From NCBI GenBank assembly GCA_030390025.1, contig CM059453.1, positions 6,200,001 to 6,264,000 of the forward strand: a stretch of DNA of 64,000 nucleotides, given 5' to 3'. Below the pieces are notes generated by a model. The model saw only the letters and a list, made by a program, of their open reading frames with translations. It was not told the DNA's origin and made no database searches. Source of the DNA: Squalus acanthias. Lineage: Eukaryota. This document shows, in pieces, positions 16,238 to 54,503 of this stretch. Every line of letters starts with the position of its first letter. Positions within the stretch are counted from its first letter, which is position 1. The translations under genes were made by a program, and so were the position numbers.

Positions 16238-16405
16238 TCACTTATGCTTCATTGCTGCATATTCGCAGGTCTCCTCATTTTGAATATATTGATCATGTTT
16301 GCGGAAGTTTGAGAAATTGACGGTCGCGTACACAATCTCGTCATTCTGAGCTGGTTTAGTCGATTGAGCGGCGCCATGACCAGCCTCTGTACACTGATGG
16401 TCCCT
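16238..16405 (-). CDS. Gene A exon 8: terminal cytoplasmic exon with ITIM IVYATV and distal motif TCEYAAM
   Basis: cctttcgttacag|RDHQCTEAGHGAAQSTKPAQNDEIVYATVNFSNFRKHDQYIQNEETCEYAAMKHK*; homologous to 2305-2472 and 39503-39644. Confidence 0.88.
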   Translation of the reverse strand, partial: RDHQCTEAGHGAAQSTKPAQNDEIVYATVNFSNFRKHDQYIQNEETCEYAAMKHK

Positions 16406-19400
16406 CTGTAACGAAAGGAATTTGTGTTAGATGTGGAGCTGCAGTGAGGAAAGAGTTAAAATGACATTACTGGCAGTTTCACTGAATAGTGTAAAAAGGC
16501 AGGGGCTAAAATGAAGGGCCACATCTATAAAGATGTGGTCAAAGATAGCTGACCTTTGGAGTGATATAAAACAATTAAATGGAGACAGGATGTCCAACAC
16601 TTCAACTGCGTGTAAGAACTTTATTACCTAGGTCCCATTCCAAGGTATCTTTTAATTAGCATTCAGAAGTTTGAGTGATTGATTGAAGAGGCAGCTTATA
16701 CATGCTTATATTAAGATTCGTAACCAATCCGTGAAGGTGCATGCGGGCCAAGATGCAATCAGGTGGCAGGAGTGAATTGAGCATGAGATGGCCATGTGTA
16801 TTGTAATGTATAAAAATGTCGTGTTTGCTGTATCAATTTGGAGAAGTCTGGCTAGGAAAGAGCAGACTGTTTCCCCACCGGTGTAATAAAGACAACGTGA
16901 CTATCGATCTAAACCCTTGTGTCGAGTGTTGGTTTAAAATACTCCACAACAGAGCTATTGCAGATATGTGGTAAGTGGAGCAGGTCAGAGGCTGGGTATT
17001 CTGCGGCGATTGTCTCACCTCCTGGCTCCCCAAGCCTTTGCGCCATCTACAAGGTACAAGTAAAGAGTGTGATGGAATATTCTCCACTTGCCTGGATGAG
17101 TGCTGCTCCAACAACACTCAAGAAGCTCGACACCATCCAGGACAAAGCAGCCCGCTTGATTGGCAACCCTACCAACACCTTAAACATTCACTCCCTCCAC
17201 CACCGCACAGTGGCTGTAATGTGTACGATCTACAAGATGCACAGCAGAAATTTACCAAGGCTTCTTCCGCTGCACCTACCAAACACGCAACGTCTTCCTG
17301 CAAGAAGGATAAGGGCAGCAGGCGCATGGGAACGCAACCACCTCCAATTTCCACATCTCACTTAGAAGTATATCGCCGATCCTTCATTGTCGGTGGGTCA
17401 TAATCCTGGAACTCCCTCCCTAACAGTACTGTGGGACTACCTTCAGCGGTTCAAGAAGGCGGCTCACCACCACAGTTTCAAGGTCATTTAGGGATGCTCA
17501 ATAAATGCTGGCCTTGCCAGCGACGCCCACATCCCATAAACGAATAAAATAAAATATGGACCTGAATGCAATGGCAGTGTGCTGTCTGCACCAGAAAAAA
17601 ACAACTATTATCCCTAATAAGCTTTATAATGGGGCTGTTCAATGAGACGAGCATTGTTTTATCTTGATGCAAGAAACAAAGACCTGTCAATTGTATATCC
17701 AGACGAGTCGATAAGACTGGGGTGTGGGACTAAATTGGAAACTTCTTTCTAAGATCCAGCACAGGTACAACATTCCGAATATTGGCCTTCTGTACTGTAA
17801 AATGAGTCTAAGGCTTGGAAATAGCATTCTTGATCCGGCCTTTGAGAAATTGAGTTACAGATTTTGAAGACAAGGAAAATACGCTGAACCTTTATACATC
17901 AGTGGTTAGCCCTCGGCTGACGGATTCTGTCCAAATCTTTGCATAACACCGTCGAAAGGTTGTCAATGAATTAAAGAGGATACAGAGCAGTTTTACTAGA
18001 ATTATAGGAGGAATGAGGGACTGAACTTAAACATATAGTCCATGGAAACTGGGATTGTGTTTCCTTGGAGAAGATAATGTTAAAGAGAGCTTAGATATTG
18101 GTGATCAAAATTCTGCAGAATTTTGACACAAAATTTAGGAGAGAATGTTTCCACTGGCAGGAGGGTCGCTAACCAGAGGACACAGATTGGAAATATTTGG
18201 GACAAGAACCAAATAGGAGGTGAGAGTTTTTTTTTAGCTCAGCGAGTTGTGATCTGGAATGCGCTGCCTGTAGGTCGGTGGCAGCAGATACAACAATTAC
18301 TTTCAAAAGGGAATTGGATATAAGCGTGAACTTGAAAAAAAAATCAAATCAAGGCTAAGGGCAAACAGCAGACTAGTGTAACTAATTGGATAGCTCTTTA
18401 AAAGAGTCAGCACAGGCACCGTGGGCTGAATGGTCTGCTTCTGGGCTGCATGATTCTACGATTATTAAGACCGAAGCACTGCTATGCAATTAATATATTT
18501 TGATTTCCAGCCTCTGTTGTAGAAAAAATGCAGCAAACAGTTAATTGGATGAATGGCGAATTAATCTGTTTTAGCTGGTGTTCATTGAGGGAGAAATGTT
18601 TGTAAGTGCACTGGGAAAACTTTCATCCATCCCCACAATAGGACCAAGTTATCGATTCCCTCCATAGCAAGAAACAAACTGGGCCTCGTTTAACATCTAA
18701 TGAAAAAGGACGGGTCTTATGGCAATGCTGCACACGTTCAGTGCTGAAATGAGGTTTCAGCCCAGATCATATGTTCAAATGCTGGAGCGAAGCTTGAAGC
18801 CACAACATTCTTAACCAAAGGTGATGAACATGGGGCCCACTTCTGCAGCAAGATGCAACTCGGAAGTTGCACATAAACCTGAGGAATGGCAACGATTATC
18901 CCCTCTGGGGTCGCTGACACATTGTGATCTTGTTGGGCATTTAACAGATCAAACCTAATTGGAAGGGCTAAGATGACGTTGGAAACACATTCTTATGTTA
19001 CGAATTTGTTTTTTGAAGGAACGCCAAGGTGAGAAATACTCCCTAATTGGATTTAATCGGTCACTACACGTAGAGCCTGTTGCTATGTTGCTCTCTTGGC
19101 GACGTCAGGCGGTTAATCCTCCCTTAATGGCCGACACGTTTCTGATACTCCAGTTTATCTGTTGGGTACGGCCCGTTATGAATCACTTGCTGGTTGAAAG
19201 CACACAAAACATCCTACAATTGGCAGCCCAGCTTGGCGTCACTTACGTCAGTGTTTACTGCCTTATGCACCGTACTGTAAATCACCAAATTATCGTGTGC
19301 TTCGGTGACACGTGCAGCTTCTCCCTGTTTCTTTCTGAACAATAAAACATGCAAATTAGGCACTTCTCATAATTAACTGGAATGTTTAGTGAAAGTACTC

Positions 19401-22400
19401 GATGCCTGCGCGATGAAGGACGTCAGTAGGTCACGAAAGACTTAAGAACATAAGAACATAAAAATAGGAGCAGGAGTTGGCCATTCGAGACCCTCAAGCC
19501 TGCTCCGCCATTCAATAAGATCATGGCTGATCATCGACCTCAACTTCACTTTCCCAAACCATCTCTGTATACCTTGACTCTCCTAGAGTCCAAAGATTTA
19601 TTTATCTCAGCCTTGAAAATACTGAAAGACTCAGCATTCACAGCCCTCTGGGGCAGGGAATTCCAAAGCTTCACAACCCTCTGAGTGAAGAAATTCCTCC
19701 TCATCTCGGTCTTAAATGGACGACCCCTTATCCTGAGACTATCACCCAGAGTTCTAGTCACTCCAGCCAGGGAGAAACAACCTCTCAGCATCTACCCTGT
19801 CAATCCCCTTCTGAACCTTTTATGTTTCAATGAGACCACCTCTCATTCTTCTAAACTCCAGAGTGTTTTGGCAAATTGTACACAATCTATCATCAGAGGA
19901 CATCACTCTCACCCCAGGAATCAATCTAATGAAACTTCGTTGCACTGTCTCGAAGGGAAGTATATCCTTCCTTAGAGAAGGAGACCAAAATCGTGCACAG
20001 TACTCCAGGTGTGTTCTTATCTGTACAATTGTAGCAAGACTTCCTTACTCTTATACTCCACCCCCCTTGCAATAAAGGCCAACATGCCATTTGCCTGCCT
20101 TATTGCTTGCTGTACCTGCATGCTAGCTTTCTGTGTTTCTTGCACGATGACAGCCAAATCTCTCTGAACACCAACATTTAAAAGTTTCTCATCATTTCTA
20201 AAATATTATGTTTTTCTATTCTTCCTACCAAAGTGAATAATCTCAAATTTCCCTACATTATACTCTATCTGCCAACTTACTGCCCACTAATTTAATCTAT
20301 CCATATCCCTTTGCAGACTCTTTATGTTCTCCTCACAGCTTACTGACCGACCTAGCTTTGTATCAACAAACTTGGATACATTACACTCGGTCCCTTCATC
20401 TAGGTCATTAATATAAATTGTAAATTGCTGAGGCCCCAACAGTGATCCTTGCGGCACCCCACTAGTTGCAGCCTGCCAACCTGAAAAAGAATCGTTCATC
20501 CCCACTCTCTGTTTTCTGTCCGTTAACCAACCCTCTATCTATGCTACGATATTAGCCTCAACCCCATGAGTCCTAATCTTGTGTTCTAACCTTTTATGTG
20601 GCACCTTGTGGCAATTACTTCTCCTGATTAGCACAGACCAGATCCGAAACCAAATCTTTTCAATTTCCAACAACCAACATTTCAAAAGGGAACATTTTAC
20701 TTTATCTATGATAGGTGTTAATGGCACGGAGCTGATTGCTCTTGGTGAAAGATGAGTGTGATAAATAACGGTCAGTGAGAGGTTTATTAATGATTTCAAC
20801 CTGGTTAAATAGCAGATGCAAGTGTTTCAATCCTTTCTATTATTACGTAGACCACTTCAACACATTGGAGTTAGAAATCAGGAATAAATCAATATTCTTC
20901 ATCAATCTTTTTGCGATCATTGATTAGTTGATATTATTAAGCATGGAATTGCCTTCTTTATATATATCATTGTACATGAAGGGTTAAAAGCTGGCACCAC
21001 TCACACGAGTGTTTATGATAATTTTGTTGCGGTTTTTGTCGAAACATTGGCTGTTGAGGGGCGGCGCCTGTCCGAGGAGCAACGTCATAGATTTCAATTG
21101 AAAGCATTATGTCTGATTGGTTGAAGTATAAATTTGATTGGCAGCAGATTGCAAACCGATCTGGTTGTCATTTGAATTCACTGGGAGCCGTTCACAATTC
21201 TGAAGCTAATTATCAGCCTGCCTTTTAAAAGAAGGGAGTCTGTCTACGGCTTTCAGTGACAACTAGTCAGACCAAATAGCTTAAGTCACTGGTAAGAATA
21301 AGATAACAAGTGCAGCATAAATAATTGCTTGTTTCATACCTTAGTACATCATTGAAAACAATTTTGAAATATAATGTTCTATTCCTGGAGCCAACCAAAC
21401 TTAACACGTAATATAAACATATGTGTCACGTTACTTTTGCTATTTGCTTGTTGTTAGGCTGTTTGCTTGACTAGCTTGATTGTTAAAACTTAAGTATCAT
21501 TCTTGTGTAGTAATGTCGTTAGAGCTTGACATGATAAGGATGCTCGTGTGAGGGTGCCCAAATAAAACTAGCAGCAGAAACAAACTTAAATGGATTCTCC
21601 GCCTATTCTTTGAGCATGCTGCAAACTTTATCCAGATTACAACGGAGATGAAAACAATCACTGGCCTATAGGGTCATCTTTAAAACACCATTCTATGAAA
21701 TTAAGAATCACACATACCTTTGTATCTTCAGCATGAGCACGACTGCAATTAGAATAACAAGCCCTGTGGCTCCTCCTCCTATTATGAGGACGATTGTCGT
21801 GGAGAATATTCCTAAAATGTTGGGGAAAAAACATTGATGTACATTACGAAGTTGGGTTTAAACAACAATCTTCGAAGCACATTTATGAGCGTGAGGAAGC
21901 AAGTTTCCTTTCTGTTCGGATCAGAAAGCTAATGGAAAGTGAGGTAAATTAGGTACTCCGCTTGTCTCAACCTCATGATCCTTGCGTAAAAGCTTTTAAT
22001 TCCTGTGTTTCATCCTGGTGTAAATTGGAATTAATAATTGAAAATTCGCTGATGTAAAAATCTCAATTGATAAATTAAGTTCACGCGACAACCCACCCTC
22101 GGAAAATCAGTGTACATTATCTAATCGGATTACATTCCCGCCAAGCTCCCCAGTTACAGCGGTAAGATTTATAATCTATCGAGATAAAGCAATTTCGCTT
22201 AGTTTATTATATATCGGCGTTACACACTCAAATGAGTTTGATCAAGATAGAGATGAGCATTTATCTACAAACTGGTTGATTGCAGTTTGCTATCATGTAT
22301 TGAGAGCAATTTGGATTTTCTAAAAAAATATCTTAATTCAGAAGAATTTGTTTTCCAAGATCACTGGCTACTGCTGGTGCTCAGATAATTCCATCTTGTC

Positions 22401-25400
22401 TTGAAAATATAAACCGAACAGGTTTCAGAAGAATGAAAGTTAAAATGGATAATGCCGACGCAACCTTTCAGTTGCTGATTGACCACTGATCGAAAGAGGT
22501 CCTTACACTAATTAGAGATAGATTCAGTATGGACCTGCTTAATGGAGCTGGTATTTGCTGAAACTAACACCGTTCAGTTAGTGACTGACTATGATGGACC
22601 AACTCCCTTATAGTATTAAATTACAGACAATTTAAACATGTACCCTTAGAGTGGAGCTGGTATTTGCTGACAGAATCACCGTGCTCGTTTGCTGCAACAC
22701 ATGAGAGCAGGTTTCCGGTTCCGGTTGGGTGAGTGAATCTCAGGGAGCTCTCCATGAGGTGGCTTTTCACCGCCCAGGAGATGATATCCACATCTGACCT
22801 GTCCCCAGTGAGCCTTCTCCCGTTGAGGCACCACGTGATGTTTCCCGGCGGATTGGCTCTGATCCGGCAGCTACAATTCGTCCAATTCTCTGAGCTGGTG
22901 CATTTCGGGCCTATTAAAATTTTGGGTTTATCTAGAAAAAATGGAAACTTCAAAAGGAAATGATCATGTAAACAGTTGCAGTTTCGAAATACAATTAAGT
23001 AATGACTTGAACTAACGTAATAGTTCTGGTTGTTATATTTTAAGAAGTAGCTTTCATATGTTGCACCAGTTGAAGGCTTATTATATTTTCACGTATAAAA
23101 GGTGAGCTCGTTAGGAACAATTTCATATTAAGTCCAATGAGTGTTCAGTCCATCAATACCTCTCCTGACAGATGTTGTGAGGGACCCTCAGACGGAGCTA
23201 GCTCAGAGTTTTGATTATGTATAATATACCCACAAACGTGTCTCACCCGTCACTGTTTTAAAAGGTCAAGTCATTTAAATTTCTTCACTTTGTTTACTAT
23301 TTTAAACATCTTCATTTGTGGTGGACTTACGTGATTCTTCAATAAACGTCCGGCTAACAGGGCGACACGTCAAAGAAACAAGTCTCGGAATGTTACACAA
23401 TTAACTCCATATTATAACAAGTAATAGGAGTTGGCTTAACACCATGTTATCACACTTTTTTTAGAGAGAATTTGTGCTCATCAAACTGCTGCAAATCAGT
23501 TCTAAGTATTGGAAAATTCTTTATTTCATACTACGAGTATTATTTGTGAACAATTAGCTATAGAATAAAGGTCACAGTAAATGTGCTCCTGTCGCAACTG
23601 CATAAATGTATGAACTGCTGCATTTATGCCACAATGTGCCATCTTCCACTCCTGTCATACTGAGCGAGATGCCAGGTTAGTTTCCATTATTGGAGCCAGA
23701 GAGGTAGTTTGCCGCTATTTCCGCGGGAAGGGGTGAAACTATCCCGAACTCATGCACATGTGCACCTTAAAGCAAGCAGGCAAGAGAAAATTGGAATTTA
23801 ATCCAGAGTTCGTGAAATGAAAGGCTACTATCTAATTGGTAACTTAATACATACTTACATTGTACTGAAATCTGTGTGGAGCAGTTGGCGGTGCATAAGG
23901 CATTTTCAGCTATGCACCAATATTCATTATCGTCCTCAGAACGAATGTTGTGGAATATCTGCTTTAGTTCACCAGTGGAAGACCTGCTGGTCTCTTCACC
24001 ATTTTTCAACCAACTTAAACTGACCTGGGGTTTTTCCCAGGCCGTGCAGTATAATAATAATGAACTTCCTTCCACAGCTACTATAGAGGAGTTAATTGTT
24101 TGGATTTCCAGTCCATCTGAAACAGGCGTTAACGCAAAACGGGATTGCTTAATAAGCATAATTAAGCTCCGAATTAATTCATTATATTGGGTATGGGGAT
24201 CAGACGGGTAATTGGAGTTGAGTTCGATATTCCGCCATGATTGCCGGAGTGGCGGAGCAGGCTCGAAGGGCCGTATGGCCTACTCCTGTTCCTAATTCTT
24301 AAGTTCGTATTAAGCCCAACGAGAGCTGAGATCTGGTGTCATAGCTTCAGATCCTAACTCGGCATGGCTTTTGTTGCTTCCATGTCTGATTGATTAACTC
24401 AGAACTTGACTGGAAGTTCATAGAATAAAGATTAACTATCACGTTAAAAAATCTGTTGGAGGCACCATCATTGATTCATGGATATGAATGTCTCAAATGT
24501 AATACGACTGATGCGAATTAGAGGAGAGCCATCCCGAACCATTGATTATCGAATTGAGCTCCCCTGGTACAGAGGCTGAGCGTTTCATGATGCATTCTTT
24601 GATGCAGTTCTAATCACTAATAAATTACTTGTGGTAAAAGTGCAAATGTTTTTCCCCTTGGCATAAGTCTGTTTACTTTAGACCGGACACTTAGTGCAAT
24701 TTGTCACAGAGTGCAACTCGGAACAGAGTGTTAAGGTGCGAGTTTGGTTAGTGAGGGAGTTCGGGGAGGGAGGTGTTCCTTTCTTTTTCTATCTTTGTCA
24801 GCGTTCAGGAGAGCAGGAGCTAAAAAGCTGCACAAGAGCGGACAGAAAACCAGCGGGAGTTCGGCTCTGTGACACCCCCCAACCGGATCTGCAGAAAAAT
24901 AAAAGTTCAGTTCAAACAGAGTGCTGCGAATTGGGAATTGGTTCCTACTTTACACAAAGGAAAGAGTCCGAGAGCAGGAGCAGTCAAACAACAACAACTG
25001 CGAAAACGCTAAAGTGACTTCATAAACAGGGAAGGTGCTGATTGGTATCGAGGACCTGGTGAGTATTTGTACAGTCCAGTCGTTCAGGTAAAGTAAGATC
25101 TCTAGTTTAGAGTAAGTAGTATTTAAAGGGAAGTAAGGTCCCTAGTGTATTTAATATTCGTTCAAATAAAGTAAGTAAATGGCGTAAATTAAGGGTAGGG
25201 CGTGGCAGGGCAGGTCGGCAGCGTGAAGTGCTCCTGCTCTGCTCTGTGGGAAGTCAGGGACACTTTAGGTGTCCAAGGCGAACACATGTGCAGGAAGTGT
25301 CTCCAGCTGCAGCTACTGGAAATCCGCTTTTCGGAACTGGAGCTGCGGCTGGAGTCACTGCGGAGCACCCGCGAAACTGAGATCTTCCTGGATAGCACGT

Positions 25401-33843: not shown

Positions 33844-33959
33844 TGCTGGAAAAGCAGCAGATTTCACTCTTAAAATGAAGAAGTGTTTCACAATTAAGAC
33901 CATTCAGGTTTTTGCATTCTTCTTCCCAGTCACATCTTGGATTTTTTTGCTAATCAACA

Positions 33960-35950: not shown

Positions 35951-36899
35951 ATCAGACTTCACTTGATGTTGGGAGGCTTTCGCCCTTGAGAAGACTCCAA
36001 CCACAATTTCCAGCCCAATAAGTCAGTGCAAACATCAGGCAGTTTATTGAGTTAGTCAACTGTATCTCCGCTACGAGTGTCCACCTCTGCCCTTCGTCGT
36101 TTTTTTCTTGCTGAGGACACCAGGACCGCTCAGTAGGTTGCAATTTGAAGTCAATGCTGTAAGTCACCAGGTGTGCTACGTTTTCTGTGTCCGCTTCACC
36201 ATTAATAACTGAATGTCTCTTTATAAATGAGGCTGGCATTCTTCCTTAAGAAATCGCCAATGTTGTGAAAATTAAAGAACATTGATGATAAAGATAGGCG
36301 GACAATGAGCCACATTGAATTAGTGAAGTTTGTGCAGTTCTCATTGGTCTTTGGATTCTTCTCCTTGACACAAAGGACAGAATGACTTTTTGCTCTTATT
36401 ACTGAGAGATATGAGCATCAGTCTGTGTAATAAAATGACAACCAGTGAGATGGGTAGCATTGGTCAATAAAACTAAGAGATAGAAAGGGATGAAAACCTC
36501 TTAGAATATTTTAGCACCTGAAATGAACAGCAGCCCCATGACTAAATTGCAGTCAGAAGCAGTCACGTGCCCAGAATAGAGCAGCAGCTTGTGTAAAAGA
36601 GTAATGTTGATCAGGAAATTGTTTACCAAAATATAATACAGCGAGAATCTTCCCACTATATGGACACTGACCGTGCAACATATATACCAGAGGGAATCTT
36701 CCAACTATATCTGCAGTTCCCTTTCCTCAAATAGATTAGAATGAATGCTCCCAATATTTCTAAACTCTCTACTACACAGATACCAGAGGGAACCTTCCCA
36801 CGATATACACAGTATCCCTACCATGAATAGATTAGAATGAAACTTCCAATTATTTGTACACTTCCCCTACAACACAGAGACAAGATGAAATACTTCAAG

Positions 36900-37165
36900 T
36901 ACATAAGAACATAAGAATTAAGAGCAGCAGTAGGCCATACGGCCCATTGAGCCTGCTCTGTCATTCAATAAGATCGTGGCTGATCTTTGACCTCAACTCC
37001 ATTTTCCAGCCTGATCCCCATATCGCTTGATACCACTCGAGTTTAAAATTCTATCGATCTCAGCCTTGAATATTTTCAACGATTCAGCATCCACAGCCCT
37101 CTGGGGTGGAGAATTCAAAAGATTCACAGCCATCTGAGTTAAGAAATGTCTCCGTATCTCAGTCT
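36900..37165 (-). mobile_element. CR1 3' fragment cut at the duplication junction
   Basis: Matches 57450-57713, then stops abruptly after ..atctcagtct. Confidence 0.85.
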
Positions 37166-38948: not shown

Positions 38949-39502
38949 TACTGGAGTACTGCTTGCAGTTTTGGTCTCCTTATTTCAGGAGGGATATACT
39001 TGCATTGGAGGCAGTTCAGAGATGGTTCACTAGGTTGATTCCTGGGGTGAAGTGGTTGTCTTATGAGGAAAGGTTGAGCAGGTTGGGCCTATACTGAATG
39101 GAGTTTAGAAGAACTTATTGAATCATATCAGATTCTGAGGGGGCTTGACAGATGGGATGCATAGACGATGTTTCCCCTCGTGGGGGAATCTATAACTAGG
39201 GGGCATAGTTTCAGGATAAGGGGGCGCCCATTTAAGACTGAGATGAGAAGGAATTTATTCTCTCAGAGGGCCATGAATCTTTGGAATTCACTACCCCAGA
39301 GAGCTGTGGAGGCGGAGTCATTGAATATATTCAGGGAGGAGATAGACAGATATTTTAAATACTGGGGAGTGAAGGGTTATGTTGAGAGAGCGGGAAAGTA
39401 GAGTTGAGGCCAAGATCAGATCAGCCATTATCTTATTGAATGGCGCAGCAGGCTCGAGGGGCCGAATGGCCTTCTCCTGCACCTATTTCTTCTTTTCTTA
39501 TG
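38949..39502 (+). mobile_element. CR1 3' fragment inserted at the ancestral stop codon of gene B's terminal exon
   Basis: LEYCLQFWSP, RRNLFSQRAMNLWNSLP; CTTATG duplicated at 38943-38948 and 39497-39502. Confidence 0.92.
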
Positions 39503-39596
39503 TTTAATTGGTGCCTAATCGCAGGTCTTCTTATTTGGGCTATATGCTTCATGATTGCGGAAGTGTGAGACATTGACAGTCACGTACACAATTTCT

Positions 39597-39644
39597 TCAT
39601 TCTGAGCTGGTTGAGTCGATTGCGGGGCTCACGTGATCGTCTCT
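39597..39644 (-). CDS. Gene B exon 8: frameshifted terminal exon (RDDHVSPAIDSTSSE*)
   Basis: cttccgttacag acceptor is homologous to A. It has 22 nt versus 39 nt in A before CAATCGACT, so the IVYVTV remnant is out of frame. Confidence 0.72.
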   Translation of the reverse strand, partial: RDDHVSPAIDSTSSE

Positions 39645-45600: not shown

Positions 45601-48600
45601 TGGAGAAAAATAAAAGTGCGGTTTAAACAGAGTGCTGTGAGTTGGGAATTGGTTCTTACTTTACACCAAGGAAAGAGTCTGACAGCGGCAGCAGTCAAAC
45701 AACAACAACTGCGAAACCACAAAGTGACGTCATAACCAGGGAAGGAGCTGATTGGTAACTACGAGCTGGTGAGTATTTCTACAGTCCAGTCGTTAAGGTA
45801 AAGTAAGATCTCTAGTTTCGAGTAAGTAGTGTTTAAAGGGAAGTAAGGTCCCTAGTGTATTTAATATTCGTTAAAGTAAAGGAAGTAAATGGAGTAAATT
45901 ACGGGTTGGACATGGCAGGGCAGGTCGGCAGCGTGGAGTGCTCCTCCTGTGCTATGTGGGAGTCAGGGACACTTTCGGTGTCCAGTGCGAACAGGTGTGC
46001 AGGAAGTGTCTCCAGCCGCAGCTACACGAAATCTGCGTTTCGGAGCTGGAGCTTCGGCTGGAGTCACTGTGGAGCATCCGCGAAACTGAGATCTTCGTGG
46101 ATAGCACGTGCAACGAGGTGGCATCACCGCAAGTAAAGAGTGCCCACGCAGAGAGGTAATGGGTGACCGCCAGACAGAGTAAAAGAACTAGGAGCATAGT
46201 GCAAGCATCTCCCTCTCCAACAGATTTTCCATTTTGGATACTGATGGGGGAGTTGTTTGCTCAGGGGAATGCAACAAGAGCCAAGTCCGTGGCACTAGTC
46301 GTGGCTCAGCTGCACAGGAGGGGAGGAAAAAGAGTGGGAGAACAATAGTGATAGGGGATTCTATCGTACGTGGAACAGATAGACGTATCTGTGGCCGCAG
46401 ACGTGACACCAGGGTCGTATGTTGCCTCCCTGGTGCCAGGGTCAAGGATGTCACTGAACGGCTGAAGGCCTTCTGAAGGTCCGAGGTCGTGGTTCACATT
46501 GGTACCAACGACATGGGTAGAAAGAGGGATGAGTTCCTGCAACAAGAATTTAGGCAGCTAGGTAGCAGATTAAAAAGCAGGACCTCAAAGGTTGTAATCT
46601 CTGGATTACTCACGGTGCCACGTGCTAGTGAGTAAGGAATATGAGGGTAGAGCAGATGAATGCGTTGCAAAAGAGTTGGTGCAGTAGGGAGGGTTTTAGT
46701 TTCCTGCATCACTGGGTCTGCTACTGTGGAAGGTGGGACCTGTACAACTCGGACGGGTTGCACCTGAACAGGAACGGGTCCAACATCCTTGCGGGGAGAT
46801 TTGCTAGTACTATTGCAGGGGGGATTGGGTGGTTAAACTGACTTGGCAGGGGGATGGGATACGGAGTGGAGCTATATAGGGGGTGATGCACAGCCAAACA
46901 TACAGGAAAAAAACAAGTCAGCCTAGAAGGCAGAGCAAATATATAACGCCACAAGGGACTACGGCAAGGCTGGATGGCATTTATTTTAATGCATGGAGTC
47001 TTGCGAGATGGCAGATGAATTGAAGACATTGAGGAACACCTAGGAGTATGATATTGTTGCTATCACAGAGACATGGTTGAGGCAGGGGCAAGACTAGCAG
47101 CTCAGTATTCCGAGGTGTATACTCTCCAGGCGAGAGAGAGGGAGGTGCAAAAGAGGAGGGGGTGCGGCAATATTTATCATGGAGACAATTAATGCTGTAA
47201 ACTGGGATGATATCTTAGCAGGTTCCTCTAATGAGGCTTATGAGCAGAACTTAGAAACAAAAAGGGGGCAAGCAATTTGCTGGGAGTGTACTATAGGCAC
47301 CCATACAGTCAGGGGGAGAAGAGGAACAGCAATGTAGGGAAATCCCTGAGAAGTTTAGAAATAATAGGATAATAATAGTAGGACATTGCAACTTCCCCAG
47401 TATTAACTGGGATAGTCAGAGTGTGAAAGGCTTAGTGGGTGCAGAATTCCTAAAGTGAATCCAGGAGATCTTTTTGAGCCAGCATGTAGAACGTCCGACA
47501 AGAGACTGGGCGGTACTGGACCTAATTCTAGCAAATGGTAGAAGTGTCAGTAGGAGAGCATTTTGGTGACAGTGAGCATAATTCGGTGAGATTGAAGGTA
47601 GTTATGGAAAAGAATAAAGATGGACCTGAAATTAAGGTTCTAATTGGGGGAAGGCCGATTTTAATATGATAAGGCAGGATCTGGCCAAAGTGGACTGGGA
47701 TCAGCAACTTGAAGGAAAATCCACATCAGAGCAGTGGGAGTCTTTCAGAAAGGAAATAGAGAGAGTACAACACCAACATGTTCCCGTCAAGGTCAAGGGT
47801 GGGACCAACAAGCCGAGGGAACCCTGGATGACAAGGAGATATACAAGAATGGATTATGTAAAAGAGGGAGGCTTTTGGCAGACACAAAGGACCAAAAACA
47901 GTGGAAGCGCCAGAGGAGTATATAATGCGCAGGGGGTGCTTAAAAAAATAAATTAGGAGAGCGAAGAGGGGGCATGAAAAAACACTGGTGGGCAAAATAA
48001 AGGAAAATCCCAAGGTGTTTTATATGTATATTAAGGGCAAGAAAATAACGAGGGAAAGAGTAGGGCACATTAGGGACCAAAGTGGCAATCAGAGTGTAGA
48101 GCCGGAAGATGTAGGTGAGGTTTTAAATAAATATTTTGCAGCTGTGTTTAAGATGGACAAGGGTGATGCAGGTATAGAAATCAGGCAGGGGGATATACTT
48201 GAACAAATTAGTATTGAGAGGGAGGAGCTACTACCGGTTTTAGCGGGATTAAAAGTGGATAGCTCCCCAGGCCCTGACGGGATGTATCCCAGGGTGCTGT
48301 GTGAGGCAAGGGAGGAGATTGCAGGGACACTGACACACATTTTCAGAACCTCTCTGGCCACAGGGGAGGTGCCAGAGGACTGGAGAACAGCTAACGTAGT
48401 ACCATTATTCAAGAAGGCTAGTATGGATGAACCAGGGAATTACAGGCCAGTGAGCCTAACATCGGTGAGAGGGAAATGATTGGAAAACATTCTGAGGGAC
48501 AGAATTAGTCTCCACTTGAAGAGGAAAGGATTAATCAAGGACAATCAGCATGGCTTTGTCAAGGGGAGATCATGTTTAACCAATTTGATTGAATTTTTCG

Positions 48601-51600
48601 AGGGGGTGACTAGGTGTGTGGATGAGGGTAGTGCAGTTGCTGTAGTCTACATAGACTTCAGTAAGGATTTTGACAAAGTCCCGCATGGGAGACTTGTCAA
48701 GAAGATATGAGCCCATGGGATCCTGGGCAATTTGGCACATTGGATCCAAAATTGGCTTAGTGGCAGGAGGCAGATGGTGATGGTCGAAGGTTGTTTTTGT
48801 GACTGGTCGCCTGTGTCCAGTGGTGTACCGCAGGGATCGGTGCTGGGTCCTTTGCTGTTTGTAGTGTACATTAATGATTTTCATATGAATGTAGGAGGTA
48901 TGATCAGTAAGTTCGCAGATGACACGAAAATTGGTGGAGTGCTAAATAGCGAGGAGGGAAGCCTCAGGCTACAGGACGATATAGAAGGGTTGGTTAGATG
49001 AGCACAACAGTGGCAAAAGGAATTTAACCCTGAAAAGTGTGGGGTGATGCATTTAGAAACATAGAAACATAGAAGATAGGAGCAGGAGAAGGCCATTCAG
49101 CCCCTCGAGCCTGCTACGCCATTCAGCGAGATCATTGCTGATCATCCAAATTCAGTACCCTGTCCCTGCCTTCTCTCCATATCCCTTGATCCCTTTAGCT
49201 TTAAGAAATATATCTAACTCCTTCTTGAATATATTAATGAAATGGCATCTACTGCCTTCTGTTGTAGAGAATTCCATAGGTTCACCACACTCTGGGTGAA
49301 GAAATTCCTCTTCATCTCACTCCTAAATGGCTTACCCCTAATCCTGAGACTATGACCGCTGGTTCTGGACTCCAGAGCCATCGTAACATCCTTCCTGCAT
49401 CTAGTCTGTCTAGTCCTGTTAGGATTTTATAAGTTTCAATGAGATCCCCTCTCATTCTTTGAAACTCCAGCGAGTATAAGCCCAATCGACCCAATCTATC
49501 CTCAAACAACATTCCTGCCATCCCAGGTATCAGCCTGGTGAATATTTGGTGCACTCCCTCCATGGCAAGAATAACCTTCCACTGATAAGGCGACCAAAAC
49601 TGCACACAATACTTAAGATGTGGTCTCACCAAGGTCCTGTACAACTGCAGCAAGACATCCATTTTAGGAGGACTAATAAGGCAGGGGAATATACAGTGAG
49701 TGGTAAGACCCTAGGAAGGACAGAGGATCAGAGGGACGTTGGTGTGCATGCATATATATATATCCCTGAAGGCAGCAAGAAAGGTAGATAAGGTGTTTAA
49801 AAAGCCAGATGGAATACTTGCCTTCATTAGCCGAGGCATAGAATATAACAGCAGGGAGGTTGTGATGGAGCTATACAAAACGCTATTTATGCCACAACTG
49901 GAATACTGTGTGAAGTTCTACTCGCCACACTAGAGGAAGGATGTGATTGCATTGGAGAGGGTGCAGAGGAGATTCATCAGGATGTTACCTGGGCTGGAGC
50001 GCTTCAGCTATGAAGAGAGACTGGACAGGCTGGGGTTGTTTTCCTTAGAGCATAGAAGGCTGAGTGGTGACCTGATTGAGGTGCACAAAATTATGAGGGA
50101 CATAGATAGGGTCGATAGAAAGGAACTTTTCCCCTTAGTAGAGGGGTCAATAACCAGGGGGCATAGTCTCAAGGTAAGGGGCAGGAGCTTTAGAGCGGAT
50201 TTGAGGAAAAACTGTTTCTCCCAAAGGATGGTTGGAATCTGGAACTCGCTGCCTGAAAGGATGGTAGAAGCAGGAACCATCACAACATTCAAGAAGCATT
50301 TAGATGAGCACTTGAAACGCCATCGCATACAAGGCTATGGACCAAGTGCTGGAAAATTGGATTAGAATAGACAGGGCTTGATGGCCGGCGTGGACACGAT
50401 AGACCGGAGGGCCTCTTTATGTGCTGTATAACTCTATGACTTACATTTAATCTCCAAGGTAAAATTTTGTGCTGATGGAATTGTGATACCATCAATTAGA
50501 ATTGTGCATCCTAGAATTTTCCCGTCATTAGCAGATGATGGTGTGAAGATGATCACGGATGAAACTGTCCGAGAACCTGAACTTTCATTGCTAATTTCTG
50601 CTCCATCTTGAGTATCCATTGCGGGAGGAAGGGACACATTGTAATTAATCCACTTCAGTTTCAGGTTGCCATCCGGGCAGTTGTGGGTGACAGAACAGGT
50701 CAATCGTGCAGTTTGTCCAGCGGTCAATTCCCCATAACCTGATATATCTGGCTTTTCTATAATAACGGGAGAAAACCAGCTTGTTAGGTGCATTTCAATG
50801 TTAAAACGGGCGATTGATGGCTTACAACTAAATCTGAGAAAGAAGTAACAAGAAAATCATTTTTAATTTTTTTTCTCTGCTAGGTGTTGCAAGTGTGTTC
50901 TCCATTCTCAATTACTCCTCGCAGATGTAATGTAGTTTTATGCCTCATCGGGTAACATGTAGCCCCACTTAATTAAACAATAGTCGTTATATCTCCTAAA
51001 TTATTTGTATCATGTATATTCTCCAGTGAACCAATTTTACAGGCTGGGCTTAGAATCAACGTTCACTCTTCAAATGTCACGAATATTTCATCCTCTCTTA
51101 TGATTCCTTCTGCACCAGTACCTGCCAATGTGATGGTGACTAATGCTGACCCAGAGAGATCTCGATTCTGTTGCCAAGAAACTTCAATGGAGAACGACAA
51201 TGCTCAAGAAAGGGACAGACCAGACAAAGGGCAGATAACACCGCCTTGTCTGGGAGCAACAAGGCAGGTCCCTCGCTTGTAAATCTCATGAAGGCTTCAG
51301 CAGAACCAGCATTTGTTGAAGTGGTATTAGAATGAACAAATAAATTATAACTTGACATGATTTTCACGTTACTGAAATATCTACTTTTTATTTAAGATCT
51401 AATTAAAAGCGTGGTAAATGAGCGCTGGATAGGGAAACGCACGAACAAAGACTGCATTAATTCGGCGCCGTTTAACTCCTGGCGACATCAAAAGACGCTT
51501 CACCAAAAAGTAACTTGAAATGTAATCAGCCAGCCATTGTCGACGGTAAACACAGGAGATTATTGGAGTATATATTAAGATATTTGGAATTAAGGATAAT

Positions 51601-54503
51601 GTAGAAATTGCAAAATAAACTGTTTAGAAGGGACGATGCAGTCAGTCGCCGTTAAGTGCAGTTGCTCAGAATGGTTGGATCTGAGTATGGTGTCCCATGG
51701 GGCTATGCTGTGGGATTGCTTTTACTCACTGTGTGCATCAATAATTTGGAGAAGGCGCTAAAGAGACTGATGTCCAAATTTCCCGTTACGAGTTAATTAG
51801 ATTCCAACAAAATGAAAATTGTGCAGTGTGTACAATGGGAGGCGCATCCACTATCGCCAGTTTGACAAACATGACAAAGTTGCTAGTACAACTCCCAGGA
51901 AATAACTAGAGAACTAAAGGGAGTTACAAATGGATACGAGAGATATTGTAGAATGGGGACATAAGAGGCAGATATAATTCAAGGTCAAAAAATATGAGGT
52001 GGTAGATGTTAATTTGAACCGTAGGAAGCTGGGAGATGTGGAAGAGCAGAGGAATTTTGGGTCAGGTTCATAAGACAGTAAAAGCAGCACCTCCAGTGGA
52101 AAAGTGTATGAAAATGTTTCTCGAGCTCTGAGTTTCATGGCAGGAGATCTGTAATATAAATTCGAGATTAGTGGCGATTCTAAAGAGAACAGTAGTTTGT
52201 TCGCATTTTGAGTAAGAATACGGATATTGGACGCCAGCCTATAGGAAGGCTACAGGGTTGATTCGCATAGTTTCTGTCTGGTATGATGAAGTACAATTAG
52301 CAAGAAACTATTTAAAAATTGAGGCAGATTTTATTAGGCTAAAACAGATTTTGGGATGATTTGACAGAAGTGCTGAAACTTTTTAAGCAACAGGACAGAG
52401 GAGAAAGAAGCAGACTGAAGTCGAATTTGAAATGGCCGCCCTGGTTAAAACTGTCATTCCAGACAAGTCACCCATTCTAGCAACCAGCCGAGTTCCATTA
52501 CCTTTCATGTCATTGTAACTAATGAGCTGCTGGTGAATGTATTGTAAGTACGACCAAAAATGTCAGCTTTAGGTTCAGTCAACACTTAGTAAATCTATCC
52601 TCATGTGGACATTTCAGAATAGTCTCGACAGGTGTTGGAAGGGAATTGCAATAAAGGGATATGGGAACTGAGCAGGCACATGCGATTCGGAGTGTTGATC
52701 ATGGGAAGGACAAACAGCAACACGGGCTGGCTGGACCGAACGGCCTGATTTACTGCTGTAATTTCTATATACCTCTGTGCTTAAGATATGAATGCATGCG
52801 TCTCTTATCAGTACCCCTGCCCGCTATGTTTCCACGAACCTTAATGTTCGGCCAGATAAACCAAAAAAATTGAAATCTTTAAAAATAGGATGTGAAGGCC
52901 CTGGGGAGGGGGCAGAGCAGATTTACCAGAATGGTTCCGGCAGATGGGGGATCTTAGCTAATAGGATATGTTGGAGAATCTGGATTTGTTTTCATTTGAG
53001 CAAAGGAGGTTGAGGGGTGATTTGATAGAGGTGTACAATATTATGACGGGTTTGGATAGGCTAGACGGGGAAAGGCTGTTCCCACTAGTTGATGGTACAA
53101 GGACCAGGAAACAGAGATAAAGGTTTTGGGCAAGAGATACAGGGGGAATGTGATTAAAAACTTTTTAACGCAGTGAGTGGTGAGGACCTGGAACTCGCTG
53201 CCGACGGAAGTGGTGGAAGCGGAGACACTCAATGTTTTCAAGGGGAGACTGGATAGGCACTTGAGGGAAATAAACTTGATAGGGCTACGGGGATAGAGTG
53301 GGGAAATGGGACTGACTGGATTGCTCTAAAAAGACCCGGCACGCACTCGATGTGCCGAATAACCTCCCTCTGTACCGTTATAAATCTATGAATTGATGTT
53401 GATTCATACTAAAACAATGGAATAAAAATGTACAAGTACAATAAATGGCAAACTCACCTAAAACAGAAAGAAAGACTTCAGAACGGAAAATGCGATGTGT
53501 AATAGAATTTCTGCCCGAGGTGATGGCTGTGATGAACTGATATGCACCCTCATCACTCTTTCGGATATCCTTTATCAGGAGGGAGCATTGTCTTTTTTCA
53601 AGGTTGCCCTTAAACTCAGCTCTGCCACTATAATTATAATGCTGCCTGAATGGAACATTCGAATCATAGATAATGGTGTCATTGGGTTTTCCAGGACCAG
53701 GTTCCCTCTTTATCCACCTCCCGTTCAGGTTGGCGATGTAGCCCATGTTATCAAATTTACACGGGATCTCTGCACAAGAACCCAACACCGCCGACACAAC
53801 TTTTGGCATCACCACAGAACATTGAACACTACAAAAGGCTGAGAAAATAAAATATTAGACTGCCTTTAAGAATCTATTCAAAATGTATTGCAAATTCTTA
53901 AGCATCCATAAAATTGCTTGTTGATTGACTAAAAGCCTCCCAGCACAATAGCAATTTAATTATCAGTTAAACACTATTCAAAATCAAGTAAAATACTGAC
54001 TAAATACCAATCGCAAAAATTATTGACATGTTCATTGGAATATATATTTGATAGTAGTTTTATCAACAAATAATATGCATATTTAATACTCATCTGAAAA
54101 CCGAACACATATCCACTAAGAAGCAAGTGAATGCCCTATAAAATCTTCATTAAATATAAATTAAAATTAATATTAATTAAAATGAACATTACACTTCTAT
54201 TGACTCTCCCTTGAATTACTCAATCAATATGAATTAGCTTGCTATTAAATGTGCATTACAATTCTCATTAAATATAACTTGAAAAGCCCTATATTTAAAT
54301 ATTGTTTGAATAGGCAATCACATGCAATAACACACTTATGGAATACCAACTCACCATTGATACAATCAATTAAAAAAATTATATTAGGTCCTGTCCTTTT
54401 CTTTTCCCAGCAGATATTAATCAGCTGTTTTAGAAATTAGTAAAAACGTAAGAAATGTACCTTCGTTCAATACCATGAGAGAAACCAACACGCAAGTCCT
54501 CAT
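39597..54503 (-). CDS. Gene B: Siglec-like (V-set + 3 C2-type Ig) receptor with TM arginine and no intact ITIM (putative activating type), 500 aa; complement join 54461-54503, 53458-53838, 50445-50756, 44562-44819, 43347-43634, 42445-42538, 40105-40183, 39597-39644
   Basis: All exons GT-AG with the same phases as A and an open frame of 1503 nt. TM TILLIIRGGATGIVLLIAVVLLL; tail RKKSSETACVPKTASGALVYTGDLNVERDDHVSPAIDSTSSE*. Confidence 0.82.
40105..40183 (-). CDS. Gene B exon 7: cytoplasmic exon, ITIM degraded to LVYTGD
   Basis: attttttag|(R)KKSSETACVPKTASGALVYTGDLNVE|gtaagt; 9 nt shorter than A. Confidence 0.82.
40520..41330 (-). mobile_element. CR1 fragment specific to gene B intron 6
   Basis: Minus-strand IYINDL..SNFADGT, RPQLEYCVQFWAP, LEQRRLTGDLI. 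Confidence 0.9.
42445..42538 (-). CDS. Gene B exon 6: transmembrane with Arg (AGA at 42506-42504)
   Basis: attttttag|GIFSRTILLIIRGGATGIVLLIAVVLLLKIQ(R)|gtatga. Confidence 0.92.
43347..43634 (-). CDS. Gene B exon 5: membrane-proximal Ig domain
   Basis: ttttag|YKHTILAGPTCISSENWTNCNCRIRANP..SCVAANEHG..LHSK|gtatgt. Confidence 0.92.
44562..44819 (-). CDS. Gene B exon 4: Ig domain 3
   Basis: gtttcag|YGLEIPTVNSS..LYCTAWGKP..W..DDGEYWCIAENALG..ISVQ|gtaagt. Confidence 0.92.
45410..50440 (+). mobile_element. Paralogous near full-length CR1 LINE in gene B intron 3, with nested minus-strand CR1 fragment at 49055-49659
   Basis: ORF1 ATG at 45912, IGDSIVRG, HIGTND, DGLHLN; ORF2 [17 protein letters not shown]; same nested insertion and CATTT duplication as in A. 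Confidence 0.95.
50445..50756 (-). CDS. Gene B exon 3: C2-set Ig domain 2
   Basis: EKPDISGYGELTAGQTARLTCSVTHNCP..GKILGC..LEIK|gtaagt. Confidence 0.93.
52880..53395 (+). mobile_element. CR1 3' fragment in gene B intron 2
   Basis: Paralog of 32220-32735. Confidence 0.88.
53458..53838 (-). CDS. Gene B exon 2: Siglec-type V-set domain
   Basis: AFCSVQCSVVMPKVVSAVLGSCAEIPCKF..QCSLLIKDIRKSDEGAYQF..LSVL|gtgagt. Confidence 0.94.
54461..54503 (-). CDS. Gene B exon 1: signal peptide
   Basis: gccATG MRTCVLVSLMVLNE G|gtacat. Confidence 0.85.

What the first reader, a model, noticed from the sequence alone, without database searches (positions are those of the whole stretch)
16238..54503. Tandem inhibitory/activating paired Siglec-like receptors (Siglec-5/14-style) in an apparent cartilaginous fish
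Seen in the sequence: two adjacent complete genes with closely similar ectodomains. A has an uncharged TM plus two ITIMs and a distal Tyr motif. B has an intramembrane Arg and no intact inhibitory motif. Established: paired receptors (human Siglec-5/14 and 11/16, LILRA/B, KIR, PIR) combine shared ectodomains with either ITIM tails or a TM basic residue that recruits DAP12/FcR-gamma. Inference: this is an independently evolved paired Siglec-like system, possibly countering pathogens that exploit the inhibitory receptor. The TM and tail exons are invisible in the ORF track, so automated annotation would probably miss the contrast.
Basis: partly seen in the sequence, partly recalled or inferred. 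Interest (0 to 1): 0.95.

Follow-up and report, generated by a model that had tools for sequence, protein, structure and literature searches.

The report
Paired shark Siglec-like receptor genes
Two neighbouring shark immune-receptor genes share almost the same outer part, but one carries inhibitory signalling motifs and the other has lost them and gained a charged membrane residue, so they may form an inhibitory/activating pair like those known in mammals.

Summary
On the minus strand lie two complete 8-exon genes, A (33843-16238) and B (54503-39597). Each encodes a signal peptide, a Siglec-type V-set domain, three further Ig domains, a TM segment and a tail. All splice sites are kept and the ectodomains are about 89% identical. 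A has an uncharged TM, two ITIMs and a distal Tyr motif. B has a derived Gly-to-Arg change in the TM and has lost ITIM1. A 17-nt deletion puts its still-intact second ITIM out of frame.

New here:
- Identity between A and B falls from 95% to 73% along the genes, and the tails belong to different old lineages. The front halves were therefore homogenised, as in Siglec-5/14 and Siglec-11/16.
- B's ectodomain is under purifying selection: 10-19 derived replacements against 41 expected if neutral. A's ectodomain evolves faster.
- B's TM exon evolves at the neutral rate, and Gly-to-Arg is a likely chance outcome.
- Both V domains lack the sialic-acid-binding Arg.
- Public shark annotations already hold clearer pairs of this kind (Mustelus asterias).

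No RNA data were available, and adaptor coupling is untested. The paired activating reading is plausible (about 0.4) but not shown. The scan had already noted similar clusters elsewhere in this genome.

The parts
16238..33843 (-). Gene A, the inhibitory-type 4-Ig Siglec-like receptor. It has 8 coding exons: 33843-33801 (signal), 33178-32798 (V-set), 30095-29784 (Ig2), 24116-23859 (Ig3), 22931-22644 (Ig4), 21811-21718 (TM), 19334-19247 (cyt1), 16405-16238 (last exon with stop).
   Evidence: Searches give splice sites, phases and a total of 1632 nt. One search gives the Pfam Ig hits. One search shows all exons from V to the last one matching shark family proteins.
39597..54503 (-). Gene B, the ITIM-less counterpart with a TM Arg. 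It has 8 coding exons: 54503-54461, 53838-53458, 50756-50445, 44819-44562, 43634-43347, 42538-42445 (TM), 40183-40105 (cyt1), 39644-39597 (last exon, with stop after 15 codons).
   Evidence: Searches give the exons and a total of 1503 nt. Searches show that the ectodomain is constrained.
42504..42506 (-). Arg codon AGA in B's TM exon, where A has GGA. Four of the five shark outgroups have Gly here and none has Arg, so the Arg is derived in B.
   Evidence: DNA alignment; polarisation: G->R derived in B, 4 outgroups against 0.
19268..19285 (-). A's ITIM1, VIYSTV.
16319..16336 (-). A's ITIM2, IVYATV.
16250..16267 (-). A's distal Tyr motif, CEYAAM. It matches the C-terminal xEYAxI motif of other shark family members.
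39575..39592 (-). ITIM-coding sequence IVYVTV in B. It is intact, but the 17-nt deletion near 39634/39633 puts it out of frame when the acceptor at 39644 is used. An AG with first exon base 39601 would put it back in frame.
   Evidence: In one search this frame still matches P0162 at 56% identity (E 1e-10).
21670..37165 (.). A-side copy of the homogenised tract. It runs from about 3.3 kb upstream of the ATG through the TM exon.
42397..57713 (.). B-side copy of the homogenised tract. Identity to the A side falls from about 95% (5' flank to Ig2) to 88-91% (Ig3/Ig4) and 85% (TM exon).
19435..20602 (.). Repeat copy in A's intron 6, absent at the matching place in B (a copy-specific insertion).
38951..39505 (.). 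Repeat of the same family, inverted, just 3' of B's last exon and absent from A's 3' end (a copy-specific insertion).
   Evidence: One search shows very high repeat depth over it.

Best explanation
A and B are two functional tandem members of an elasmobranch Siglec-like receptor family with one V-set and three further Ig domains. The family keeps the Siglec fold but not the sialic-acid-binding Arg.

Shown:
- Both genes are intact 8-exon genes.
- The region from about 3 kb upstream of the ATG through the TM exon has been homogenised between them, more recently towards the 5' end.
- Their cytoplasmic exons come from different, older tail lineages.
- A encodes an uncharged TM, two ITIMs and a distal ITIM-like Tyr.
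- With the conserved splice sites, B encodes a TM with a derived Arg and a tail of about 45 residues without an ITIM.
- B's ectodomain has been under purifying selection since it last shared sequence with A.

Inferred:
- A recruits SH2 phosphatases and inhibits.
- B reaches the cell surface with the same or a similar ligand specificity.
- B signals the opposite way by pairing its TM Arg with the TM Asp of an ITAM adaptor of the FcR-gamma or DAP12 type. That would make it a paired receptor like Siglec-5/14.

My odds: B is a functional gene about 0.75. B is adaptor-coupled and activating about 0.4.
For: - Gene models and splice sites.
- TM and tail contrast.
- Homogenised 5' part: identity is about 95% from the 5' flank to Ig2, 88-91% at Ig3/Ig4 and 85% at the TM exon, then 77% and 73% beyond.
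- Tails of different lineages: B's cyt1 carries the ACVP signature of P0160, P0168, P0170, P0025 and P0002. A's cyt1 resembles P0005, P0159 and P0162.
- Selection on B's ectodomain: 10 B-derived replacements, 27 A-derived and 9 ambiguous. About 41.4 nonsynonymous changes per lineage are expected if neutral. Poisson P is 5.5e-9, or 8e-5 if all ambiguous sites are given to B.
- No indel falls in 1359 coding nt from signal to TM. About 4 are expected from 0.045 indels per substitution in the introns.
- The Arg is derived: four of five outgroups have Gly at that site and none has Arg.
- Only 16 uncharged residues separate the Arg from the cytoplasmic Lys, too few to span a membrane, so the Arg sits inside it.
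- ITIM-less members with a basic TM residue exist in other sharks: P0122 (Mustelus), P0035 (Cetorhinus) and P0172 (Stegostoma).
- P0122 and the ITIM-bearing P0012 have consecutive accessions on one contig and 77% identical ectodomains.
- An ectodomain under selection implies that the TM still anchors the protein, so the Arg must be tolerated or used (inference).
Against: - No transcript evidence. None of the 3 listed runs held the stretch, and the laid contigs covered only repeats, apart from one 255-nt unspliced piece at 95% identity.
- B's TM exon evolves at the neutral rate: 5 B-derived replacements against 4.9 expected.
- 18 of 144 possible nonsynonymous single-base changes in the TM core give Arg. 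Four apolar changes plus one Arg is what drift would give (P 0.39).
- In the same family a basic residue near the outer TM end coexists with ITIMs: P0159 has Lys and 2 ITIMs, P0002 has Arg and 1 ITIM.
- B's tail is not short, at about 45 residues.
- An AG at 39601, with the same pyrimidine count (11 of 20) as the conserved acceptor, would restore the IVYVTV ITIM in frame.
- The nucleotide outgroups (Ig3 and Ig4 only) show more A-derived changes at synonymous sites too (12 against 5). Part of the A/B asymmetry may therefore come from patchy conversion by other paralogues, not from selection.
- A 2014 survey found no FcR-gamma in the shark data then available (PMC4016189, passages read). I could not look for adaptors in this genome.
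Confidence: 0.42

Rival explanations
1. B is a functional surface receptor but is not coupled to an adaptor. It could be an ITIM-less non-signalling or decoy partner that competes with A for ligand. It could also be a weaker inhibitory isoform made by using the downstream AG, which restores the second ITIM. On this reading the TM Arg is a tolerated residue that snorkels to the outer leaflet.
For: - B's ectodomain is constrained, while its TM exon drifts at the neutral rate.
- Basic residues near the outer TM end coexist with ITIMs in P0159 and P0002.
- ITIM-less members with uncharged TMs are common: P0163, P0161, P0169 and isoform P0154.
- The cryptic acceptor at 39601 gives an in-frame IVYVTV.
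Against: - Only 16 uncharged residues follow the Arg, fewer than in P0159 and P0002 (18 each), so the Arg lies deeper.
- The conserved acceptor at 39644 is intact.
- The ITIM frame has a TGA 12 codons upstream of the motif.
- The distal Tyr codon is a stop in that frame.
Confidence: 0.3
2. B is a dying or dead gene. An old ITIM-less or pseudogenic 3' end was joined to a copy of A's 5' part by unequal crossing-over or conversion. The 5' part looks intact only because it was refreshed recently, and the TM Arg is one more neutral lesion.
For: - The tail exons carry two deletions (9 and 17 nt), a lost ITIM1 and a stop at the distal Tyr codon.
- B's last exon differs from A's mostly by replacements.
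- The TM exon evolves at the neutral rate and Arg is a likely random outcome.
- Nonfunctional partners persist and take part in conversion in primates (SIGLEC16P; PMC5701461, abstract and passages read).
- No expression data exist.
Against: - Since the last homogenisation B has far fewer replacements than neutrality predicts, and fewer than A (10 against 27, binomial P 0.008).
- There is no stop, frameshift or lost splice site in 6 exons that carry 92 nucleotide differences.
- The cyt1 exon keeps a strong acceptor and a GTAAGT donor.
Confidence: 0.22
3. A and B are two haplotypes of one gene that the assembler placed in tandem.
For: None beyond the high similarity of the 5' parts.
Against: - Intron divergence is 5-14% in the aligned tract and 23-27% beyond it, far above any plausible allelic divergence.
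- The cytoplasmic exons belong to different tail lineages.
- The repeat insertions are copy-specific.
- The window holds further family fragments, and the scan's notes describe a larger cluster.
Confidence: 0.02

Closest known systems
[quoted passage not shown]
   Same: - The genes are closely linked and their 5' parts (upstream region plus ectodomain exons) are kept alike by gene conversion, while the TM and tail parts differ.
- One partner carries ITIMs. The other has a basic TM residue and no ITIM.
- I read passages of PMC13358205 and the abstract and passages of PMC5701461. That Siglec-14 uses a TM Arg and DAP12 is partly from those passages and partly recalled.
- The window shows the same identity step between the 5' part and the tails.
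   Different: - The lineage is a cartilaginous fish, and the pair arose independently within a shark-specific family.
- Both partners lack the sialic-acid-binding Arg.
- B's Arg sits in an inhibitory-type TM that differs by single substitutions. It is not a distinct activating TM exon.
- B's tail is about 45 residues long.
- The homogenised tract is about 15.5 kb.
- Here the inhibitory partner's ectodomain evolves faster.
- Adaptor binding and co-expression are not shown.
Annotated shark pair in Mustelus asterias: XP_078093182.1 (P0012) and XP_078093181.1 (P0122), with the same TM type in Cetorhinus maximus XP_078392811.1 (P0035)
   Same: - They belong to the same elasmobranch Siglec-like family.
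- P0012 has two ITIMs. P0122 has an Arg in the TM (..FPIRV..) and a 12-residue tail.
- Their ectodomains are 77% identical in BLASTP.
   Different: - They belong to another subfamily, some members of which keep the F-strand Arg.
- The activating-type TM and tail form a distinct module shared by two shark orders, so it is old and conserved. B's Arg is a lineage-specific point change.
- No exon of that TM type is present in the window. One search gave only chance-level hits.
Other paired IgSF receptor families: KIR, LILR/PIR, and, recalled and not looked up here, teleost NITR and LITR and skate MDIR
   Same: - Each family combines ITIM-bearing and charged-TM members with related ectodomains in tandem clusters that evolve by birth and death.
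- I read passages on paired receptors in PMC4016189. NITR, LITR and MDIR are recalled only.
   Different: The Ig domain types and loci differ. The family here has the Siglec V-set hallmarks.

Membership tests
Siglec family (sialic-acid-binding Ig-like lectins) | An N-terminal V-set Ig domain most similar to Siglec V-sets, followed by C2-type Ig domains. | tested here: met
   - Pfam V-set (E 1.6e-10 and 7.7e-9) and Ig_CD22 (E 1.8e-9 and 9.8e-8) match the V exons.
- The best solved relatives are sialoadhesin (E 1.4e-10 and 2.5e-10), MAG, Siglec-8, CD33 and Siglec-5.
Siglec family (sialic-acid-binding Ig-like lectins) | The Siglec cysteine pattern (recalled as a hallmark): a B-E intrasheet disulfide in place of the usual B-F one, an extra Cys in the V domain, and a CSxxxxC motif in the next domain for an interdomain bond. 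| tested here: met
   - In the HMMER alignment to sialoadhesin, the query's GSC..IPC and ..QCSL align with the chain's GSC..IPC and ..VCNL. The F strand has Y-x-F, not Y-x-C.
- Ig2 has LSCSVTHNC in A and LTCSVTHNC in B, like LTCSVPWAC in a mammalian Siglec-like hit, P0062.
- The bonds themselves are inferred.
Siglec family (sialic-acid-binding Ig-like lectins) | The essential F-strand Arg that binds the sialic-acid carboxylate (Arg97 of sialoadhesin; the residue number is recalled). | tested here: not met
   - GAYQFITAI in A and B aligns with GTYNFRFEI of sialoadhesin, so Ile stands at the Arg position.
- The closest shark relatives also lack it: QFI, CFI, YFS, EFL.
- I therefore file these genes as Siglec-like, not as shown sialic-acid lectins.
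Siglec family (sialic-acid-binding Ig-like lectins) | Binding of sialylated glycans. | not testable with these tools
   This needs a glycan array or binding assays with recombinant V-Ig2-Fc protein.
Paired inhibitory/activating receptors | Closely linked genes with highly similar ectodomains, kept alike by duplication or gene conversion. | tested here: met
   - The genes are tandem, about 20.7 kb apart start to start, with a 15.5-kb tract at 91% identity.
- Ectodomain identity is 363 of 409 residues.
- There is an identity gradient, and the tails come from different lineages.
Paired inhibitory/activating receptors | An inhibitory member with cytoplasmic ITIM(s). | tested here: met
   A has VIYSTV and IVYATV plus a distal CEYAAM, all conserved in shark homologues. 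Phosphatase recruitment was not tested.
Paired inhibitory/activating receptors | An activating member with a basic residue inside the TM and a tail without ITIMs. | tested here: inconclusive
   - The Arg is present and derived, with 16 uncharged residues to the cytoplasmic Lys.
- The tail has no ITIM if the acceptor at 39644 is used.
- The ITIM returns in frame with the AG at 39601. The TM exon evolves neutrally. Basic TM-edge residues coexist with ITIMs in P0159 and P0002.
Paired inhibitory/activating receptors | Association of the activating member with an ITAM adaptor, and opposite signalling. | not testable with these tools
   No adaptor gene lies in the window. Literature searches for TYROBP or FCER1G in sharks gave nothing relevant in the top 10 of 49 and of 25 papers listed. 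PMC4016189 reported no FcR-gamma in the shark data of 2014.
Paired inhibitory/activating receptors | Expression of both partners in the same cells. | not testable with these tools
   No RNA run was listed as holding the stretch. The 3 runs of the same species label covered only repeats.

The most novel reading that the evidence does not exclude
Elasmobranchs evolved their own paired Siglec-like receptor systems, kept in register by conversion of the 5' part. The A/B locus catches the birth of an activating partner in the act. A single Gly-to-Arg change turned an inhibitory-type TM helix into an adaptor-binding one, on a gene whose ITIM tail had already decayed. Meanwhile the inhibitory partner's ectodomain runs ahead (27 derived replacements against 10), as expected if a pathogen exploits it. 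That would place the paired-receptor arms-race logic, with Siglec-type domains that no longer need sialic acid, at the base of jawed vertebrates.
Probability: 0.3. Interest if true: 0.65.

Novelty: new member of a known kind. Interest (0 to 1): 0.45.

Why it matters
Paired inhibitory/activating receptors are a recurring answer to pathogens that exploit inhibitory receptors. They have been worked out mainly in mammals.

- **Age of the design.** A pair in a shark, built on Siglec-type domains and kept alike at the 5' end as in Siglec-5/14 and Siglec-11/16, would show that this design and its genomic mechanism are very old or arise repeatedly.
- **A simple test.** B offers a natural one-residue test (Arg against Gly) of how an activating receptor is born.
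- **Ligand.** The whole subfamily lacks the sialic-acid-binding Arg, which points to a non-sialic ligand.
- **State of the literature.** My searches of the open literature found no description of shark Siglec-like pairs. Automatic annotations of other sharks already contain clearer examples. Subscription journals and supplementary files were not searchable and may hold such a description.

Tried and rejected
**RNA evidence.** The look-up of sequencing runs on B's 3' half listed 3 small runs of the same species label, none holding the stretch. Laying them gave depth only over repeats, plus one 255-nt unspliced contig at 95% identity over 39606-39860. This says nothing on transcription.

**Search for an alternative activating TM exon.** I compared the C-termini of P0122, P0035 and P0172 (the FPIRV and mid-TM-Lys types) with the window by tblastn. 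Only chance-level hits came back.

**Depth of the basic residue as a discriminator.** The uncharged run after the basic residue is 16 in B, 17 in P0122, 18 in P0002 and P0159, and 19 in P0035. B's Arg is the deepest, but the margin is too small to separate activating from ITIM-bearing members.

**Test of the TM substitution pattern against drift.** It is not significant (P 0.39).

**Nucleotide outgroups inside the window.** I used the plus-strand Ig3-like exon near 1700-2000 and the Ig4-like relic near 58500-58940. They gave A-derived 26, B-derived 14 and ambiguous 12 in the exons, against 9 and 9 in the flanks. The direction matches the protein outgroups, but the numbers are too small for per-lineage dN/dS.

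**Literature.**
- Siglec with cartilaginous fish, with shark plus ITIM, or with Callorhinchus found nothing on this family.
- Paired receptors with shark also found nothing on this family.
- DAP12, TYROBP or FCER1G with shark or cartilaginous fish found nothing on shark adaptors beyond PMC4016189.
- The whale-shark genome paper only lists Siglecs among Ig families (one passage read).

**Species.** None of the 21 proteins, and none of the best hits, is close enough (at most 63% in the V domain) to come from the window's own species. No annotated model of A or B could therefore be consulted.

**Rejected reading.** 'B derives from A by four lesions' is rejected, because the tails belong to different lineages.

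For that reason no whole-protein search, structure prediction or topology prediction was run.

Full report
**What is there.** The window is about 42% G+C and rich in repeats, with one N run at 12525-12712 outside the finding. ORF listing on the minus strand shows two sets of four long Ig-like ORFs. All eight hit Ig families in Pfam, and the first of each set hits V-set and Ig_CD22. Direct-repeat and self-BLAST searches show that the two sets belong to a tandem duplication with a spacing of about 20.66 kb. Region 21670-36477 matches 42397-57132 at 91.3% over 14.8 kb, and 36583-37165 matches 57131-57713 at 95.5%.

**Gene models.** I placed exon ends by reading frames, AG/GT sites and A/B alignments.
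- Gene A (downstream): 33843-33801, 33178-32798, 30095-29784, 24116-23859, 22931-22644, 21811-21718, 19334-19247, 16405-16238. Total 1632 nt.
- Gene B (upstream): 54503-54461, 53838-53458, 50756-50445, 44819-44562, 43634-43347, 42538-42445, 40183-40105, 39644-39597. Total 1503 nt.
- Introns after exons 1 to 5 are phase 1, the intron after exon 6 is phase 2 and the intron after exon 7 is phase 0, in both genes.
- The signal-exon junction agrees in length with NCBI models from other sharks.
- The finding's ends are A's stop codon and B's start codon.
Everything below was done exon by exon.

**The contrast between the tails.**
- A's TM exon is uncharged. Its first cytoplasmic exon holds VIYSTV, and its last exon holds IVYATV and a distal CEYAAM.
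- B's TM exon has GGA changed to AGA, which gives ..LLIIRGGATG...
- B's first cytoplasmic exon keeps excellent splice sites but reads ..ALVYTGD.. and has a 9-nt deletion.
- B's last exon keeps the acceptor but has a 17-nt deletion, so the frame stops after 15 codons.
- The old ITIM (IVYVTV) is still intact in another frame, with a TGA 12 codons upstream of it. The distal Tyr codon is a stop in that frame.
- An AG whose first exon base is 39601 would put IVYVTV back in frame. Its pyrimidine count (11 of 20) equals that of the conserved acceptor. Only RNA data can exclude its use.

**What family.**
- Both V exons are closest, among solved structures, to sialoadhesin (E 1.4e-10 and 2.5e-10). MAG, Siglec-8, CD33 and Siglec-5 follow.
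- The Siglec cysteine pattern is present.
- The F-strand Arg that binds sialic acid is Ile in both genes. It is also missing in the closest shark relatives.
- A search of 1.84 billion representatives with B's V exon gave 345 hits at E up to 0.001, and 4 at E up to 1e-30.
- The best single-domain matches are from Heterodontus, Heptranchias, Cetorhinus, Mustelus, Chiloscyllium, Stegostoma and Narcine. NCBI names them Siglec-8, -13 or -14, or MAG-like.
- A search with the Heptranchias protein P0005 found 21 proteins at E up to 1e-30. Twenty are elasmobranch and one is a turtle MAG.
- The cartilaginous-fish origin is therefore supported. The window's own species is not among the annotated ones: the best V-domain identity is 63%.

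**How the pair evolved.**
- Identity between A and B is about 95% from the 5' flank through Ig2, 88-91% around Ig3 and Ig4, and about 85% around the TM exon.
- It then drops to 77%, and to 73-75% in the alignable pieces beyond.
- B's first cytoplasmic exon carries the ACVP signature of one group of shark tails (P0160, P0168, P0170, P0025, P0002). A's resembles another group (P0005, P0159, P0162).
- The tails are therefore old and separate, and the 5' parts were homogenised later, probably more than once. This is the pattern described for Siglec-11/16 and Siglec-5/14 (PMC5701461, abstract and passages; PMC13358205, passages).
- Copy-specific repeat insertions (19435-20602 in A, 38951-39505 in B) and this divergence rule out falsely assembled haplotypes.

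**Is B alive?**
- Between A and B, the exons from signal to TM differ at 92 of 1359 nt, with no stop or indel. Overall dN/dS is 0.53.
- I polarised the amino-acid differences with up to ten shark proteins. In the ectodomain this gives 27 changes derived in A, 10 derived in B and 9 ambiguous. In the TM exon it gives 1 in A and 5 in B.
- From local intron divergence, neutrality predicts about 41 nonsynonymous changes per lineage in the ectodomain. B lies far below that (P 5.5e-9, or 8e-5 with all ambiguous sites given to B). A lies at 27-36.
- The A/B asymmetry is significant (binomial P 0.008).
- Introns show 0.045 indel events per substitution, so about 4 indels were expected in the coding exons and none is seen.
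- B's ectodomain has thus been kept by selection, and the inhibitory partner is the faster one.
- Caveat: with the two nucleotide outgroups in the window (Ig3 and Ig4 only), A also has more derived synonymous changes (12 against 5). Patchy conversion by other paralogues may contribute to the asymmetry.

**Is the Arg meaningful?**
- For:
  - It is derived: four of five outgroups have Gly there and none has Arg.
  - It leaves only 16 uncharged residues before the cytoplasmic Lys, so it must sit inside the membrane.
  - A selected ectodomain needs a working anchor.
  - ITIM-less family members with a basic TM residue exist in three other sharks: P0122, P0035 and P0172.
  - In Mustelus asterias the ITIM-bearing P0012 and the Arg-TM P0122 have consecutive accessions on one contig and 77% identical ectodomains.
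- Against:
  - B's TM exon has evolved at the neutral rate, 5 replacements against 4.9 expected.
  - 18 of the 144 possible nonsynonymous single-base changes in the TM core give Arg, because of the three GGA Gly codons. The observed mix fits drift.
  - P0159 (Lys, two ITIMs) and P0002 (Arg, one ITIM) show that a basic residue near the outer TM end does not by itself mark an activating receptor in this family.

**What could not be tested.**
- No RNA run was listed as holding the stretch. The three runs of the same species label covered only repeats.
- No adaptor gene lies in the window, and my literature searches gave nothing on shark adaptors beyond a negative 2014 survey.
- I found no paper describing paired Siglec-like receptors in cartilaginous fish. 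Subscription journals and supplementary files were outside my reach.

**Verdict.**
This is a real, tandem, 5'-homogenised pair of Siglec-like genes, one with ITIMs and one without, and both appear to be alive.
- That B is an adaptor-coupled activating receptor is the single most likely reading, at about 0.4, but it is not shown.
- It is a new member of a known kind, not a new kind. Clearer examples already sit unremarked in public shark annotations.
- The scan's own notes report similar clusters elsewhere in this genome. I did not test those.

Noticed in passing
window 597-2463, + strand: This is a fragment of a further family member in the opposite orientation. It has an Ig2-like exon (597-998), an Ig3-like exon (1694-1993) and a last-exon-like piece (2299-2463). 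The last piece reads ..EEVLYAAVSVSNVRKQERYLQHEESSE*AAIK. No Ig4, TM or cyt1 exon lies between them, and the 5' part lies outside the window.
   Followed up: partly
window 2299-2463 (+), 39500-39530 (-); protein P0164: The distal-motif Tyr codon is replaced by a stop in three places: the plus-strand fragment (..ESSE*), B's old ITIM frame (..TCD*), and the annotated Heptranchias protein P0164, which ends ..NEESSE. This recurrent one-base loss of the distal motif may be a common way of trimming the tail in this family.
   Followed up: no
window 58500-59162, - strand: An Ig4-like exon relic lies upstream of gene B (ORF 58623-58823). It is about 70% identical to the Ig4 exons of A and B and 54% to P0005. 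No other family exon was found beside it up to the window's end.
   Followed up: partly
window 43229-43276 and 22527-22574, - strand: A short relic of a second Ig4-type exon end lies in the Ig4-to-TM intron of both genes. It reads ..NGVSVSKYDLNSAGPY in B, and A's copy carries a stop. Some shark relatives (P0025, P0160) have a duplicated Ig4 domain.
   Followed up: no
window 22931-24116 (gene A, Ig3 and Ig4 exons): A has gained three extra cysteines in its ectodomain that B and most outgroups lack..ALCTANCST.. in Ig3 and ..ITWCLNG.. in Ig4. A's Ig4 donor is GTACAT where B has GTATGT. This is part of A's faster ectodomain evolution.
   Followed up: partly
window 27356-28342 and 47988-49001; also 19546-19791, 28493-28723, 39168-39401, 57571-57846, 5081-6588: Reverse-transcriptase-like ORFs of a LINE are shared by intron 3 of both genes, so they were inserted before the homogenisation. 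Many copies of a repeat encoding ..RGHSxRIRGRPFKTEMRRNFFTQRVVNLWNSLPQ.. occur in both orientations across the window.
   Followed up: no
window 3074-3572 and 10051-10722: Two tandem-repeat (minisatellite-like) blocks appear in the self-BLAST. The first lies in an ORF-rich, Ser/Pro/Leu-rich stretch.
   Followed up: no
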